Assembly: GCA_002104905.1 (NCBI GenBank)
Contig: MCFE01000163.1
Location: 62,001 to 126,000 of the forward strand
Length of the DNA: 64,000 nucleotides
Direction: 5' to 3'
Source: Basidiobolus meristosporus CBS 931.73
Lineage: Eukaryota > Fungi > Basidiobolomycota
Under the pieces are notes generated by a model that saw only the letters and a list, made by a program, of their open reading frames with translations, had not been told where the DNA came from and made no database searches. How positions within the stretch are numbered: position 1 is the stretch's first letter; each line of letters starts with the position of its first letter. Shown here in pieces: positions 58,292-64,000 of this stretch. The position numbers were made by a program, and so were the translations under genes.

Positions 58292-58774
58292 CTAATGGCT
58301 TTGCTTCACCGCATAGACATGATCGGAATTGATCGTCATAGAGATGTTGTGGTCGAGTCCATGAACTTTACAGAGTTGGTTAATGTTTGGATCTCGCTTA
58401 AATGGGTCCATACTGAGCTTTACATGTACCTGTGACTTTTTGGAGTTCGCTTTCATCGGATTTGCTTAGTAGAGAAGATACATCTTGTAGAAGCTTGTTG
58501 ATGGTCTTCACTTCATCTGGTTTACCAAGATCACCAGTAGACTTTTAGTAATAGATCGATGTTAGTCTAGGCGTCCCTGTTCCTTCAAAACGACATGAAC
58601 TTACCGAGATCAGATTTCCCTCAAGATCGGAAACGAATGACCCGGTGTGGTTGGGTAGAGAGGCAAGTGCTTGGAACGACGATTGCTCGGCCTAACGGAA
58701 TTTCTGGTTAATCTCAAGCATAGCTCTGTCTCTCTCTCTACTGTGATATAACTTGTGGATGCTTTACTTACCAT
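58292..58774 (-). CDS. LAMTOR4-like Ragulator subunit, 91 aa; exons 58774-58772, 58691-58605, 58541-58430, 58365-58292
   Basis: Spliced by eye: MAEQSSFQALASLPNHTGSFVSDLEGNLISSTGDLGKPDEVKTINKLLQDVSSLLSKSDESELQKVTVHGLDHNISMTINSDHVYAVKQSH. Three GT-AG introns (80, 63 and 64 bp) keep frame, and the pattern resembles LAMTOR4 (roadblock fold). Confidence 0.72.
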
Positions 58775-58868
58775 TTCTGTAGTTACGAATCAAGGAAATA
58801 GCCAAAGTCACCATTGAAAATTGGGGAAGGGGAGGCACGTGATCAGGAAAATTTCATCATGCATAACT

Positions 58869-61841
58869 TTATTGATGTTGAATCAGATCTAGAAGTTGGG
58901 GGTTAATCAGAACAGGGCGAACAGTGTTGGCCGCAGAAAGGAGTGGATTTTCGAATCTGGCTGATGCACTTTTCAATGCAGTAACAATCATTTGCTAAGG
59001 TAGGGTTAGCGGTGGTTATCAAGGTTATGTATGCTGATGAGTCGGATTTACCTGGTATTGGGCATTGTCATCGTTCAGTTGCAGCATCAGGGTCCTTAGA
59101 ATGTTTTCTACATGACTCCCCTCAAAGTTTGGTGAAACGGCGTCTAGTAGCCGTGAAACGCTGATAACTGCTTCGTTTCTTACTTCATCCTGAGCATCGT
59201 CCAGTCTCTTCAAGATCTCCGGATACATGGCGATGATCAATCGATCTAATGTTTGCTTAGCATGGATCCACGTGATGGTTAGGGTTGGCACCACTTACCA
59301 TCAGCCATCTGGGGGCAGAAGCATTTCGTCGTCTCCTCCAGCAGTTTCAGCGATCTGAGGCGCGTGCCCGGAATCTCATCTTCCAAGGATTGGCACAGAA
59401 TCATGACCAGCTGGTTGGACTGCTTCGGATCTAGCGAAGTGCTGGAGCGGTTGGATCTCAGCAAAACGTATAGGCTCTCCATGGCTGCTGCCCTTACTGT
59501 TGGGGTCTTTTGAGGCGGGTGGTATTCTAGATTGGGCAAAATGATCTCAAAGACTAATGACACAGCGTGTTGATCCTTAATAGATGTGTGCTGGAACACG
59601 CTGTTCAACGTCTGGAAGATCCTATTCCAGTTTTTAGCATTGTTTCAGTTTTTAGCATTGGGATGAAAACCCAGATTGAATGAAGCATCCCTACCGAACC
59701 CTAAGCTCCGAGTCTCGTTTGATATCAGTGAGCGTTTTCAAGCTGCTCAACACCTGGTCTAGATGGGGTTCGATGAATTCTCCTGATTCCACCAACAGTC
59801 GGCAGAACATTCGGAATTGCTCCGAATCTGTGTTCCACTTGGATTCGCTGCGCTTGAGCTTCTCGAGAAGATCATCAAAGTATTCGGCTACAAGTTCACT
59901 TGGGTTTGCGAATCCGTGCATAGCAGAGAGTGCGGAGATCGCTGCAGGGATCTTATCTGCGCCCTGGAGAACATTGGTTAGCGAAGCTCGCAGCATCTAT
60001 TTCTCAGAATCACCACCTTGCGGTCGTCTTCAAGGATCAGCAGAAAATGAAGCAGCTGGTATCCTTCTGGGCATTTGGTCAACGTTATCCCTCCTTCGGA
60101 CATTTTCGTCACGAGATTGTATGCGATGTCCACTGAGCTCTGGACGCATTCCTCTTGAATGAATTTCCTGTGGCAAAGAGTCTCAACCAGCCAAGGGACG
60201 ATCCCCAAAAGTTCGGAGCAAGAGGACCCACGAATGCATGACTCGAGCACCATTAAAAGGTTGGGGCGGGTCTCTTGGCTAGCCATATTGATCTGCTGCA
60301 CAGTCAGGTGAGCATAGATTGAAGGGTGCACATACTTTCCCAGAGTCACTGCACATTTGATTCCCTAGCCAAGCGTTAACATGGTTGAACGTTACGATAG
60401 AATGAGCTTCGCCTACCTGACTGACAACAGATGAATCTTTGTGTTGAGCCTGCATGTACAGACTCTGTAGAATTTTGGCTGTGTGGACCTCGATGGCTTT
60501 TCCCGCGTGCTCTATCAATGTATCAAGGACCTTCAAGGCCAGCACTCTATCAGTAGTGCACCAATGCTGTGTGTCTTCGAGAATCATGGGAAGAGCGTAT
60601 TCAATTGAATTCTGGGCCAACGATCCTGACGAGCAGCGTTAGAACTGATGCTATATCGCTTGGAAAGATAGCTCGCTTACCCGTTGACTTATCACTATCG
60701 CCATACCACTTTTCCAGGTCGGTAAGGTATTGACGGCATAATGTTTGCAAATCTCCAACTTCGTCGGACATTCCTGCGAACACAATTGGCAGGATTTTGA
60801 AGCTGGAGGTGTCTTGAATTGATTGATGGATCCAGTGCTTAACTACAGTGTAAAGCTCTTGGCGGACTGATGCTGACTTGTCGAAGACCAACTTATGAAG
60901 GTGTTCCAAAATCAAGTCGAGGCTAGCCATATCCAACTCCACCAGCACTTCAAGTGCCTAATGATGAAATACGTTAGATTCCCAACGACCCTACGCTGCG
61001 TAAAGAGCGATTTACCCGAAGCGAAGATATTCTAATGGACGAATGTCGATGTGTTAAAGAAGGTATCAATGCTTTGACTAATGGTTGAGCCTGTAAGCGA
61101 AGATCTTTTCCAGCAATTCTACCAAGCTCGGTAACTAGCTGAATCGAGCGCTGCAGGAAATACGAGAATCAGTAAGTATGGTCAGAATATGCTTCTGAAC
61201 TAAGCACTCTACTTTTTTCAACTCTGGAAAGACATCCTGTAAACTGGCTTGGAATATTTCTACAAGAATATTGACCACGTCGTGCTCATATCCTCCTTGC
61301 TTGATGACTTCTCCGCACACCTCAATCCATTCCAGACGGATTTCTTCAACACTCTCGATGTTTTCCTCGGTCAGCCTTTCTTTAGCTACCTTAAGCACCC
61401 TCAGTTTATGCTGAACTGGTGATTCTTTTTCGAATTTGATGAAGCTTAAATGTCCACAATACTTAGAGGCAGTTCTTTGACAAGTAGCTGCCAAGTATAC
61501 ACTTACTTTGCGATGATCTTGACGCTTAATTCTCGACATTTCTCCACTGAATCAACACTCATGCTCAACAAAGTCTCCCCGAGGGCTTCAAAAAGCGCCA
61601 CATAGACCGCATCATCCTTCTTGCTTCCGAATATGACTTTATCTATGCTTTCCAAGGCGCGACGTTTACTCACACGATCAGTACCTGTGTCATTTAGCCG
61701 ATTGACATCGCGTTGAATGGACTAACGTCGGAAGAACAGAAGGGTCAATAAGAAATCGAGCAGAAAGTCCGAATCGAACTGCAAGAATACCTGAAGGGTA
61801 AGATCATACAGTGACAGCTGCTCTGTCGTGAGATTCGACAT
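58869..61841 (-). CDS. DNAAF5: HEAT-repeat protein, dynein axonemal assembly factor 5 (HEATR2) homologue, multi-exon
   Basis: N-terminus LQSIQRDVNRLND...KRRALE...SVDSVEKCRELS; IESVEEIRLEWI; LQDVFPELKK; LVFDKSASVRQELY..V..W; KRLDDAQDEVR; first intron 61790-61722. Not every internal splice site was checked. Confidence 0.8.
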
Positions 61842-62016
61842 TCTACTATGTGTTGTATATAACTAAGAGAAACTAAACAATGAGTACCACAGCCAATAGT
61901 TAAGCAAAAGAGCGCAAAAGAGCGGCGAATAGCCACCATTATCCAAGATTAATATCCATTCGTGATTAAGAAAATAAACAACATTCCGATTTATTAATTT
62001 TGAGAAATTTTCTTCT

Positions 62017-64000
62017 TCATGTGCGTTTCTGCCATATTGTGCATTCAGCAAAAATAAATTCATATTTCCGCTGAGTCTCACGAAGTACAAATGGCACGTG
62101 GAAGGAATCCAAAGTACCGTCGACATTTAGGGATTCGAAAGTATCCCGGAAGCTGGGGTCGTGTGGCTTGACACGAACAAGGTCAAACCAGGGGCTCAAA
62201 ACCTGCTCCAGGCCGTCACGAGTAGTCACATTTTCGCCATCAACCTTCTTGCCTCCGATCCAATTTTCGAATGGAGTGAAGTCAGGCAACCAGGTGTTCG
62301 GCGACAAGATGACAAGAAAACCGCCTGGTACGATGCGTGTGTGAATGGTTTCAAGGAAAGATATGGGGTTGTAGAGACGGTCCAGCACATTGGCGGCCAA
62401 AACACAATGGAAATTGAAGTACACAGGATTGGTGGAGTTCAGGTTGCATGCGTCTCCTTGAAGGAAGAGAACTTTATCTGCTATCACCTGGCGTTCAGCT
62501 GCCTTCTGGCCTACGGGCTGTGGGCCGAAAAGCTGCTCAACCAACTGCAAACCAGCTGAACCATCCAACGGAAGGTCCGAGGATCCTAAAACAACCTCAC
62601 GAAGTGCTTGGATCTCTCCTTCAATGGGTGTTGAGTACCGAATGCTGCCCCGTTGGGCTAATTGGTAGCCCACTTGGATGAACCGTGCCGATAAGTCCAC
62701 TCCCACAACTTGGTCAAAGAACTGCGACATCTCGAAGGTTGAGCGCCCGGTAGCACATCCAAGATCCAAAGCGCGGATGTCCTCCTGTCCTCTCAGCTCA
62801 GAGAACTTCGAGTTCCGCACCAATGCTTCACAGATTCGGGCAGAAACTGCTTGGAAGGATTGCACATTGGGGAAGGGGGGTTGAGGACCATAGTGTCCCT
62901 CACAATAGCAGTTGACTTGGACATCGGTTTCGTACGGATTTCCAGAGGTTTCCTGGCCATTTCCTGTGACGAAAATGTTCTTGGCTTCGAAATCAGCCTC
63001 TCCATCAAGCGCCAGGGCATCTTGACCTATCGGTTGCACAACACGGAAACCGGCGTGTTGATAGAAGTGTCTTCTGAATGCATAGCGAGAATAGATTGTG
63101 GCTTCATTGCCAGTGGCAACCCAGGAGCCGCCTTTGATCAAATTGTGTTGATCATCGAAGGTAGGCGCGGTGAAGTCGTCGTACAGCGGGTGCACCTTGA
63201 AGTCAGCAAAGGGGTACATGCATGTCTTTGTCCATTGCCATACATTCCCCATGATGTCATAGAACGGCCCGGTCTGATACTTGTTAACAGGGCAAGATGA
63301 GGAGTACTTTTGCAGGCCAATATTACAACCGTCCAGCATGTAGTCAGGACCAATCGGGTGGGTGCCCGTTTTTTTGTGCTCCTCCTCCATTGCGTATTGG
63401 AGCATGTGGTTGTACTCTTCCTCGGAGGGCAGACGGGTGAGTTTCCCGGATTTCTGGCTATACCAGCGACAGTACGCATTAGCCTCCAACGCGTTGACTT
63501 CAACGGGCCAGTCCCAGGGCATGCTCGCAGTCTCAGCCAACATGTTCCTCAAGACGTAGGACCCGTCTTCTTTCTTGACCCAGAACCGGGGGGCTTCCGG
63601 CTTGATATACTGGACCCAACGCCATCCTTCCTCGGACCAATATCTCTCTTGGTGGTAGCCGCCATCGTTCATGAATTGATAAAACTCGGCGTTTGATATC
63701 AGTGTCTCGCCAGCTTGGAAGCCGGGGACGGACGCTTCGTGGTAGCCATACTCGTTATCCCAGCCGTAAATGTTGGCGAAATTCTTGAGGTGTGCCTGCG
63801 TGCGCGCCGTGTCCGAGTGGAATGGTCGGCCAAGGGTAACAGAGCCAGCTGGAACCGAGACTAATCTAATGTTTGTCGCGGAAGGATCGTAGGAATTCCA
63901 TTCCTGGCAATCTTGCTTGAAGAATGATTTGTAATCCGGATTAAGATAAGATAACGGGAGATGACGTATGAGCACTGAAGAGGTTTCCAAGTGAATGCGC
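62017..64000 (-). CDS. ovoA: Ovothiol biosynthesis enzyme OvoA (5-histidylcysteine sulfoxide synthase, FGE-sulfatase-like domain, C-terminal SAM methyltransferase); 5' end lies beyond the window
   Basis: The frame at the window edge reads RIHLETSSVLIR (the iron motif HERIHLE, truncated by the edge). Further motifs: WDWPVEVNALEA, GNVWQW, HPLYDDFTAPTFD.QHNLIKGGSW..TGNE, SRYAFRRHFYQHAGFR, then NPYETD..RALDLGCATGR..GVDLSARFI..LQGDACNL..VPFVLRETQRKY. Confidence 0.93.
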   Translation of the reverse strand, partial: RIHLETSSVLIRHLPLSYLNPDYKSFFKQDCQEWNSYDPSATNIRLVSVPAGSVTLGRPFHSDTARTQAHLKNFANIYGWDNEYGYHEASVPGFQAGETLISNAEFYQFMNDGGYHQERYWSEEGWRWVQYIKPEAPRFWVKKEDGSYVLRNMLAETASMPWDWPVEVNALEANAYCRWYSQKSGKLTRLPSEEEYNHMLQYAMEEEHKKTGTHPIGPDYMLDGCNIGLQKYSSSCPVNKYQTGPFYDIMGNVWQWTKTCMYPFADFKVHPLYDDFTAPTFDDQHNLIKGGSWVATGNEATIYSRYAFRRHFYQHAGFRVVQPIGQDALALDGEADFEAKNIFVTGNGQETSGNPYETDVQVNCYCEGHYGPQPPFPNVQSFQAVSARICEALVRNSKFSELRGQEDIRALDLGCATGRSTFEMSQFFDQVVGVDLSARFIQVGYQLAQRGSIRYSTPIEGEIQALREVVLGSSDLPLDGSAGLQLVEQLFGPQPVGQKAAERQVIADKVLFLQGDACNLNSTNPVYFNFHCVLAANVLDRLYNPISFLETIHTRIVPGGFLVILSPNTWLPDFTPFENWIGGKKVDGENVTTRDGLEQVLSPWFDLVRVKPHDPSFRDTFESLNVDGTLDSFHVPFVLRETQRKYEFIFAECTIWQKRT

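What the first reader, a model, noticed from the sequence alone, without database searches (positions are those of the whole stretch)
62017..64000. Complete-architecture ovothiol synthase (OvoA) in a fungal genome
Seen: a 657-codon open frame with the OvoA signatures (RIHLETSSVLIR iron motif, the HPLYDDF Tyr-containing motif, SRYAFRRHFYQHAGFR) fused to a C-terminal class I methyltransferase. Established: fungi typically make ergothioneine via Egt1, whose methyltransferase is N-terminal, while ovothiol (OvoA/OvoB) is known from bacteria, trypanosomatids, stramenopiles and marine animals. Inference: this fungus may make ovothiol A or a related 5-thiohistidine, which I do not know as a described fungal pathway. 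The gene has no intron over about 2 kb and sits 175 bp upstream of an ordinary intron-rich fungal gene, so it is genomically integrated rather than a contaminant read. It could be an ancient retention or a horizontal acquisition. No OvoB-like PLP lyase is visible in the window.
Basis: partly seen in the sequence, partly recalled or inferred. Interest (0 to 1): 0.88.

Follow-up and report, generated by a model that had tools for sequence, protein, structure and literature searches.

The report
Expressed ovothiol synthase gene in Basidiobolus
The early-diverging fungus Basidiobolus meristosporus carries and transcribes a complete gene for OvoA, the enzyme that starts synthesis of the antioxidant ovothiol, which suggests that a fungus can make ovothiol-type thiols, although fungi are known only for ergothioneine.

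Summary
Window 62017-64000 (minus strand) encodes the last 660 residues of an 833-residue OvoA. The contig is B. meristosporus CBS 931.73 MCFE01000163.1. The missing N-terminus is intact just outside the window and carries one 57-nt intron.

- **Family:** the full protein passes both NCBIfam OvoA models (574 bits against a cut-off of 400; 223 against 170). It fails EgtB (152 against 360). It matches the solved OvoA 8KHQ at E 2e-173, and all nine active-site residues described for 8KHQ are conserved.
- **Genomic status:** DNA depth is flat across the gene and its intron-rich neighbour. A cDNA-like run covers the gene with one gapless contig.
- **Copies:** a paralogue (about 80% identical) shares the intron position. 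B. ranarum has both copies. A stand-alone copy of the methyltransferase domain also exists in this genome.
- **Phylogeny:** the gene belongs to a small clade with shared insertions. Three of its uncultured members lie on eukaryotic contigs. The clade sits in the OvoA type of Geobacterales, Endozoicomonas and 8KHQ. Choanoflagellate and diatom OvoA belong to the other type, and joining the two groups is rejected (AU p 5e-6).

An old, separate acquisition is likely, but no donor was identified. The product, the lyase partner and Egt1 status are untested. The scan had flagged this gene and its paralogue in other windows. This is a new member of a known kind, of moderate interest.

The parts
62017..64000 (-). 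3' part of the OvoA gene. It encodes residues 174-833 of the 833-residue protein P0001, with the stop codon at 62017-62019. The gene continues beyond the window for 173 more codons and one 57-nt intron.
63991..63993 (-). Codon of His176, the third iron ligand and second His of HERIHLE. His76 and His172 lie outside the window.
63037..63864 (-). FGE-sulfatase-type domain of the sulfoxide synthase (P0001 residues 219-494).
   Evidence: PF03781, E 1e-27
63181..63183 (-). Codon of Tyr446 in HPLYDDF. It is the counterpart of the catalytic Tyr406 of the solved OvoA 8KHQ.
62020..62940 (-). C-terminal SAM-dependent methyltransferase domain (P0001 about 527-833; ovoA_Cterm).
   Evidence: PDB OvoM/OvsM matches
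62743..62766 (-). SAM-binding motif I, DLGCATGR (P0001 585-592).
62485..62586 (-). Insertion inside the methyltransferase domain (P0001 about 645-678, 'PLDG..G..FG'). It is shared only with the other long-form OvoA sequences and with the stand-alone methyltransferase of this genome. It is absent from the bacterial, choanoflagellate and diatom OvoA in the comparison.
61842..62016 (.). 175-bp spacer between the OvoA stop codon and the called start of the next gene on the same strand.
58292..61841 (-). Neighbouring HEAT-repeat gene (DNAAF5-like) with at least 12 spliced introns. It shows that OvoA sits in ordinary fungal chromatin.

Best explanation
This is a functional, transcribed nuclear gene of Basidiobolus meristosporus for OvoA. 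Its N-terminal DinB plus FGE-sulfatase-like module most likely uses Fe(II) and O2 to join L-cysteine to C5 of L-histidine, giving 5-histidylcysteine sulfoxide. A PLP-dependent lyase, not identified here, would then release 5-thiohistidine. The C-terminal SAM methyltransferase domain would methylate the imidazole nitrogen to give ovothiol A. This chemistry is inferred from family membership and conserved catalytic residues; it was not measured. The gene belongs to a small 'long-form' OvoA clade marked by shared insertions. The three uncultured members with informative flanking genes lie on eukaryotic contigs. The clade lies in a different major OvoA type from the choanoflagellate and diatom enzymes. 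It therefore most likely entered an ancestor of these eukaryotes separately, probably from a bacterium, well before the two Basidiobolus species split. I put the origin part at about 0.6.
For: Identity: the full protein scores ovoA_Nterm 574 bits (cut-off 400, model 3-444 of 444) and ovoA_Cterm 223 bits (cut-off 170), while EgtB scores 152 (cut-off 360) and SenA 141 (cut-off 420). The solved OvoA 8KHQ matches at E 2e-173. The residues described for 8KHQ (metal H71/H162/H166, Y406, R62, Y68, V102, F409, T413; PMC10696552) align to H76/H172/H176, Y446, R67, Y73, V109, F449 and T453, all conserved. The AlphaFold model has mean pLDDT 91.

Real fungal gene: it lies on a 148-kb contig between proteasome, threonine synthase, HEAT, ribosomal L18 and PPR genes. 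It has a GT..AG intron with a CTAAT branch site in the Trp114 codon. DNA contigs have flat depth of about 200 and bridge OvoA to its neighbour. A cDNA-like run, which shows 12 spliced joints in the neighbour, covers OvoA gaplessly at word depth 929 against about 80-130.

Constraint and age: paralogue P0002 has an intron at the same codon and phase. Between the copies dN is 0.13 and dS is saturated. B. ranarum has counterparts of both copies.

Phylogeny: the split into two OvoA types has 100/100 support. The Basidiobolus group of five rows has 100/100 and the wider group of ten has 99/98. Contigs of P0003, P0005 and P0273 carry eukaryotic genes (DAG kinase, TTI1, PI3/4-kinase, MCM, F-box). Salpingoeca, Microstomoeca and Skeletonema OvoA lie in the other type. 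One clade of all these eukaryotes is rejected (delta lnL 442, p 4.7e-6).
Against: No product or activity data exist. No OvoB-type lyase was found within 10 kb, and the rest of the genome could not be searched. OvoA enzymes are promiscuous in vitro: they show cysteine dioxygenase activity and can couple hercynine at the ergothioneine position (PMC10696552). The in vivo product is therefore not proven. The direction and donor of the transfer are unresolved. Rooted on the other type, the clade is sister to all sampled type-A bacteria (87/94) rather than nested in a named group. A Bdellovibrio MAG sequence and a 26%-GC sequence of unknown origin fall inside the group of ten. Bacterial sampling was limited to top hits. 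I named the tested clade after seeing a first tree. Word depth of contigs is a poor measure of expression.
Confidence: 0.82

Rival explanations
1. Vertical retention: the gene descends from an OvoA of the opisthokont or eukaryotic ancestor and was lost in nearly all other fungi.
For: The clade branches at the base of type A rather than inside a bacterial group. It has eukaryote-specific insertions. Base composition is host-like, with gene GC 0.51 against locus GC 0.47. The intron and the duplication are old.
Against: Choanoflagellate and diatom OvoA are in the other major type, and one clade is rejected (p 4.7e-6). No named fungus other than Basidiobolus appeared among the listed best hits (120 per search) of three searches of 5.8 billion proteins. 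A Bdellovibrio MAG sequence sits within the group of ten. Retention would need two ancient eukaryotic OvoA types and very many losses.
Confidence: 0.12
2. Recent, Basidiobolus-specific capture from gut bacteria, like the roughly 5% bacterial-like genes reported for this genome.
For: Basidiobolus is reported to hold many candidate transferred genes with few introns (PMC7466969). This gene has only one intron, while its neighbour has at least 12.
Against: The best bacterial identity is only 43-45%, while eukaryote-encoded relatives reach 50-57%. The two paralogues share the intron and have saturated dS. B. ranarum has counterparts of both copies. No bacterial sequence carries the clade's insertions.
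Confidence: 0.06
3. The enzyme has drifted to another job. It might act as an ergothioneine-type C2 sulfoxide synthase, a cysteine dioxygenase, or a maker of another 5-thiohistidine derivative, rather than making ovothiol A.
For: OvoA is promiscuous in vitro. EgtB-IV enzymes are close in sequence (8VIH, E 1e-76). The clade has insertions in the methyltransferase domain. The genome also holds an extra stand-alone copy of that domain, K493DRAFT_311473.
Against: All nine mapped active-site residues and the SAM motif are conserved. Both OvoA equivalog models are passed. EgtB-IV proteins lack the fused methyltransferase (468 aa). Purifying selection acts on both domains, with dN 0.14 and 0.11.
Confidence: 0.1
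4. Contaminant or misassembly: a bacterial read set joined to a fungal contig.
For: None beyond the low intron count.
Against: The gene has a spliceosomal intron. It lies on a 148-kb contig with fungal genes on both sides. Logan contigs assembled separately from the DNA reads bridge the junction, and depth is equal on both sides. A paralogue lies on a second contig, and orthologues exist in B. ranarum.
Confidence: 0.01

Closest known systems
OvoA of Hydrogenimonas thermophila (OvoATh2, PDB 8KHQ) and other type-A bacterial OvoA (Geobacterales, Endozoicomonas, Betaproteobacteria)
   Same: Same three-part architecture of DinB, FGE-sulfatase-like and C-terminal methyltransferase domains. Identity is 43-45% over the full length. 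The metal ligands, catalytic Tyr and substrate-binding residues are identical, and the 'RYAFRRHF' motif is the same.
   Different: The Basidiobolus protein is about 130 residues longer. The extra length comes from insertions before YGWDNE, in the linker, inside the methyltransferase domain and near the C-terminus. It is encoded by an intron-bearing nuclear gene.
Eukaryotic OvoA of choanoflagellates (Salpingoeca rosetta, Microstomoeca roanoka) and diatoms (Skeletonema marinoi); by the literature also the metazoan lineage
   Same: Same domain order and presumably the same reaction. These are also nuclear eukaryotic genes.
   Different: They belong to the other major OvoA type ('RFHFRPHF', 'GNVWEWCED' consensus). 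The split has 100/100 support, and joining the two groups costs 442 lnL units. They lack the long-form insertions. That metazoan OvoA descends from a choanozoan ancestor comes from PMC8433421; I did not test it here.
Fungal Egt1 / EgtA (ergothioneine synthase)
   Same: It shares the DinB plus FGE-sulfatase sulfoxide synthase fold (AFDB matches at 17-22% identity).
   Different: Egt1 has an N-terminal EgtD-type histidine methyltransferase, acts on hercynine and sulfurises C2. The protein here has no such domain, has a C-terminal OvoA-type methyltransferase, and scores far below the EgtB cut-off.
Stand-alone OvoM / OvsM 5-thio(seleno)histidine N-methyltransferases (PDB 9BXL, 9BXH)
   Same: The C-terminal domain of P0001 matches them at E 2e-36 to 2e-42. 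This genome also encodes a stand-alone version, K493DRAFT_311473.
   Different: In P0001 the domain is fused to the synthase. The fungal stand-alone copy carries the long-form insertions, so it derives from the fused form and not from bacterial OvoM.

Membership tests
OvoA (5-histidylcysteine sulfoxide synthase / N-methyltransferase) | Score above the curated cut-off of the synthase equivalog model TIGR04344, over its full length | tested here: met
   574.2 bits against a cut-off of 400, covering model positions 3-444 of 444. The window part alone scores 373.9 because it is truncated.
OvoA (5-histidylcysteine sulfoxide synthase / N-methyltransferase) | C-terminal OvoA-type SAM methyltransferase (TIGR04345) fused after the synthase | tested here: met
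   223.2 bits against a cut-off of 170. SAM motif DLGCATGR lies at residues 585-592.
OvoA (5-histidylcysteine sulfoxide synthase / N-methyltransferase) | Three-His iron site: one His in the DinB helix bundle and two in HxxxHxE | tested here: met
   H76, H172 and H176 align with H71, H162 and H166 of 8KHQ. Only H176 lies inside the window.
OvoA (5-histidylcysteine sulfoxide synthase / N-methyltransferase) | Catalytic Tyr and the Cys/His-binding residues of the solved enzyme | tested here: met
   Y446, R67, Y73, V109, F449 and T453 correspond to Y406, R62, Y68, V102, F409 and T413.
OvoA (5-histidylcysteine sulfoxide synthase / N-methyltransferase) | Formation of 5-histidylcysteine sulfoxide from His, Cys and O2, and presence of ovothiol in the organism | not testable with these tools
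   This needs an enzyme assay and LC-MS.
Complete ovothiol pathway | A PLP-dependent sulfoxide lyase (OvoB or equivalent) in the same genome | not tested
   No such lyase is called within 10 kb on either side. The only PLP enzyme there is a standard threonine synthase. No tool allowed a search of the whole fungal genome. A word search of earlier notes found no such lyase noted.
EgtB / fungal Egt1 (ergothioneine sulfoxide synthase) | Score above the EgtB equivalog cut-off; for Egt1, an N-terminal EgtD-type methyltransferase | tested here: not met
   TIGR03440 scores 152.5 bits against a cut-off of 360. There is no Methyltransf_33 domain, and only 22 residues precede the DinB part.
OvsA / SenA (selenoxide and selenoneine synthases) | Score above the family cut-off, or close similarity to the solved enzymes | tested here: not met
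   SenA scores 141 bits against a cut-off of 420. OvsA structures match only at E 7e-15.

The most novel reading that the evidence does not exclude
Basidiobolus and a set of uncultured eukaryotes carry a previously unrecognised long-form OvoA lineage. It was acquired separately from the animal/choanoflagellate and diatom lineage and is marked by conserved insertions in the methyltransferase domain. It is accompanied in Basidiobolus by a second paralogue and a split-off methyltransferase. On this reading, the fungus really makes ovothiol or a further-methylated 5-thiohistidine. That would be the first fungal ovothiol producer and a second thiohistidine system in fungi besides ergothioneine.
Probability: 0.5. 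Interest if true: 0.6.

Novelty: new member of a known kind. Interest (0 to 1): 0.45.

Why it matters
Reviews assign ergothioneine to fungi and ovothiol to marine animals, protists and bacteria (PMC8433421). An intact, conserved and transcribed OvoA in a culturable fungus makes it directly testable whether a fungus makes ovothiol. The two paralogues and the split-off methyltransferase add to that case. It also adds a third independent eukaryotic OvoA origin to those reported for rotifers and hydrozoans. The insertion-bearing long-form clade is a distinct enzyme variant that could be studied biochemically. For Basidiobolus, a gut-associated fungus, an extra low-pKa thiol could matter for redox stress, but that is speculation.

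Tried and rejected
- **RNA runs:** the first search listed none, and the tool was busy twice. A search of kind 'any' then gave three runs. One of them (X3), labelled 'DNA?', behaves as cDNA.
- **Splicing of the OvoA intron:** this could not be checked with reads.
- **Naming the nearest relatives:** The listing of cluster members gave no names for P0003-P0007, P0121 and others. Organisms in AFDB clusters are masked. ESM Atlas taxa for a DAG kinase (L002) and an MCM fragment (L008) showed only 'eukaryote' (Chlorophyta/Mucoromycota and Streptophyta/Chordata clusters), so they did not resolve the taxa.
- **Gerdol et al. 2019:** this is the key paper on eukaryotic OvoA distribution. It is not held in the library, so I could not check what it says about fungi.
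- **Tabima et al. 2020:** the supplement tables of transfer candidates are not held.
- **dN/dS:** dS between the paralogues is saturated, so only dN is given.
- **Contaminant and Egt1 readings:** I considered both and rejected them (see Rival explanations and Membership tests).
- **Neighbouring threonine synthase as the missing lyase:** I considered this and set it aside. It has the standard THR4 domain set, and it is absent from the paralogue's locus.
Full report
**What is in the window**

On the minus strand, one frame is open from the window edge (63999) to a stop codon at 62017-62019, giving 660 codons. The 657-codon figure is the mechanical ORF from a TTG at 63990. Pfam finds an FGE-sulfatase-type domain (E 1e-27) followed by class I methyltransferase families. 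NCBIfam finds ovoA_Nterm at E 1e-111, matching model positions 151-444 because the window cuts it off. It also finds ovoA_Cterm at 224.6 bits, above its cut-off of 170. EgtB and SenA score far lower. The quoted motifs are all present.

**Where it comes from and the missing N-terminus**

A database search returned the window's own product as an 833-residue protein, P0001. It also returned a 79% identical protein named K493DRAFT_48442 of Basidiobolus meristosporus CBS 931.73. P0001 is encoded on contig MCFE01000163.1 (148 kb) of assembly GCA_002104905.1.

The upstream 173 codons are intact and hold the DinB-type part. They are interrupted by one 57-nt GT..AG intron with a CTAAT branch site, in phase 2 inside the Trp114 codon. 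The spliced CDS translates exactly to P0001.

The full protein scores as follows:

| NCBIfam model | Score (bits) | Cut-off (bits) |
|---|---|---|
| ovoA_Nterm (whole model covered) | 574 | 400 |
| ovoA_Cterm | 223 | 170 |
| EgtB | 152 | 360 |
| SenA | 141 | 420 |

**Active site**

The solved OvoA of Hydrogenimonas thermophila (8KHQ) matches at E 2e-173. Its paper names the metal ligands H71, H162 and H166, the catalytic Y406, and R62, Y68, V102, F409 and T413 around the substrates (PMC10696552). In the printed alignment these fall on H76, H172, H176, Y446, R67, Y73, V109, F449 and T453 of P0001, all conserved. The SAM motif I (DLGCATGR) is intact. An AlphaFold model built with 70 homologues has mean pLDDT 91. 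Its shape matches OvoA clusters.

**Is it a real, integrated, expressed fungal gene?**

- The flanks within 10 kb hold proteasome lid subunits, a FAD monooxygenase, threonine synthase, a HEAT-repeat gene, a zinc-finger gene, ribosomal protein L18 and a PPR gene.
- Two DNA runs give contigs with flat word depth of about 200 over OvoA and its neighbour. One contig bridges 61050-64000 and another runs from 61751 past the window end. These runs may be the assembly's own source, so they test the join but are not independent samples.
- A third run (2013), labelled 'DNA?', behaves as cDNA. Its contigs skip twelve stretches of 52-73 nt in the neighbour gene, and eleven of them are listed with GT..AG ends on the minus strand.
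- The same run covers OvoA with a single gapless contig over 62068-64000, plus 405 nt beyond the window. Its word depth is 929, against about 80-130 for the neighbour. The gene is therefore transcribed and apparently not weakly, although contig depth is a poor measure of expression.
- Gene GC is 0.51, against 0.47 for the locus.

**Copies in Basidiobolus**

- Paralogue P0002 lies on another contig. It has a 63-nt intron in the same codon and phase.
- Between the two coding sequences dN is 0.13 and dS is saturated. The duplication is therefore old and both copies are under constraint.
- B. ranarum has K7432_011690, which is 85.6% identical to P0002 and 80% to P0001. It also has a partial K7432_007843 that is 85% identical to P0001.
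- A 321-residue stand-alone protein of B. meristosporus, K493DRAFT_311473, is a copy of the OvoA methyltransferase domain. It scores 220 bits on ovoA_Cterm and is 49-56% identical to the long-form domains.

**Relatives and phylogeny**

Beyond Basidiobolus the nearest sequences are unnamed: P0003 (55%), P0004 (51%) and P0005 (50%), then P0007, P0121 and P0273 (about 41-43%). After these come thousands of bacterial OvoA at 43-45%.

The contigs of P0003, P0005 and P0273 carry eukaryotic genes:

- P0003: DAG kinase, TTI1 and RAB3GAP2.
- P0005: PI3/4-kinase.
- P0273: MCM and F-box.

These eight proteins and the stand-alone methyltransferase share insertions that are absent from every bacterial and other eukaryotic OvoA I compared. 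The insertions are 'PLDG..G..FG' in the methyltransferase domain, a longer linker with 'FE.KN', and a C-terminal insert before 'F.VPF'. The tree used only columns filled in at least 60% of rows, so most of these insertion columns did not enter it and they are largely separate evidence.

A profile search with the other half of the family showed two major OvoA types:

- **Type A** has the 'RYAFRRHF' motif. It contains Geobacterales, Endozoicomonas, Betaproteobacteria, a Bacteroidota MAG, 8KHQ and the Basidiobolus clade.
- **Type B** has the 'RFHFRPHF' motif. It contains Competibacteraceae, Aromatoleum and cyanobacteria, plus Salpingoeca rosetta, Microstomoeca roanoka and Skeletonema marinoi.

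An IQ-TREE analysis was run on 71 rows and 709 columns under LG+C20+F+G4. It gave these supports:

| Branch | Support |
|---|---|
| Split between type A and type B | 100/100 |
| Basidiobolus + P0003 + P0004 + P0005 | 100/100 |
| Ten-row group adding P0007, P0121, P0273, P0125 and P0138 | 99/98 |

P0125 has 26% GC and unknown origin. P0138 is a Bdellovibrio sp. MAG.

- Forcing the eight long-form rows into one clade with the eight labelled type-B eukaryotes costs 442 lnL units (p-AU 4.7e-6).
- Holding the eight long-form rows together costs only 13 lnL units (p 0.16). A single eukaryotic long-form lineage therefore fits both the tree and the insertions.
- Rooted on type B, the group of ten is sister to all sampled type-A bacteria (87/94). 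No donor group can be named.

**Reading of the origin**

The gene is not the OvoA lineage of the fungus's holozoan cousins. It is old within Basidiobolus, and its closest kin are eukaryote-encoded. The most economical account is one old transfer between a type-A bacterium and an ancestor of these eukaryotes, followed by insertions, intron gain, duplication and fission of a methyltransferase copy. Ancient retention of a second eukaryotic OvoA type cannot be excluded. A recent capture from gut bacteria is unlikely.

**What is known**

- Reviews place ergothioneine in fungi and ovothiol in marine invertebrates, protists and bacteria. They report OvoA transfers into bdelloid rotifers and hydrozoans (PMC8433421).
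[quoted passage not shown] Another paper calls the Egt1 synthase part of Aspergillus an 'OvoA-domain' (PMC5066259). That older remark may therefore partly reflect Egt1.
- No paper in the library combines ovothiol with Basidiobolus or with chytrids.
- Basidiobolus is reported to hold about 5% bacterial-like genes (PMC7466969).
- The proteins are public, but they are named only 'hypothetical protein' or 'sulfatase-modifying factor enzyme-like'.
- Earlier notes of this scan had flagged this same gene in an overlapping window, its paralogue, and the stand-alone methyltransferase. I checked all three here.

**What remains open**

- The product in vivo.
- The lyase partner.
- Whether Egt1 and Egt2 coexist in this genome.
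- The taxa of the uncultured long-form carriers.
- The donor of the gene.

**Verdict**

This is a new member of a known enzyme family in an unexpected host, with a distinct insertion-bearing subclade. Interest is moderate.

Noticed in passing
window 58292-61841 (-): The neighbouring gene is a DNAAF5/HEATR2-like HEAT-repeat protein (Pfam TPR_DNAAF5 and HEAT_DAAF5) with at least 12 spliced introns. It is a homologue of a dynein-arm assembly factor, in a fungus that, to my knowledge, has no flagella.
   Followed up: no
L001 7895-9521 (outside the window, 479 bp upstream of the OvoA start): A PLP-dependent threonine synthase (Thr_synth_N, PALP, THR4_C) lies directly upstream of OvoA on the same strand. 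No such gene lies at the paralogue's locus (L003), so the adjacency is probably coincidence and this is not the missing lyase.
   Followed up: partly
another contig of the same genome (protein P0210 = K493DRAFT_311473): This is a stand-alone 321-residue copy of the OvoA methyltransferase domain. It carries the long-form insertions and is closest to P0003 (56%). It could be a second methylation step, as needed for ovothiol B/C, or a split OvoM-like enzyme.
   Followed up: partly
proteins P0413 and P0430 (unnamed type-B sequences, about 1240 aa): OvoA is fused to a PF01594 (AI-2E family transporter) domain, which hints at a link between ovothiol synthesis and export.
   Followed up: no
proteins P0154, P0188, P0207 and relatives (1100-1900 aa): These are large fusion proteins in which the OvoA core carries an extra methyltransferase-like insert between the synthase and methyltransferase parts, or long N-terminal extensions. 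Their origin is unknown.
   Followed up: no
window 58686 and 61472: All three runs read T where the window has C at 58686. Both DNA runs lack one base at 61472, inside an intron of the neighbour gene. Several other single-run differences look like allelic variation.
   Followed up: no
L007 (protein P0125, 26% GC): A very AT-rich OvoA without the long-form insertions branches next to the eukaryotic long-form clade. Its host is unknown because the contig is only 2.4 kb.
   Followed up: no
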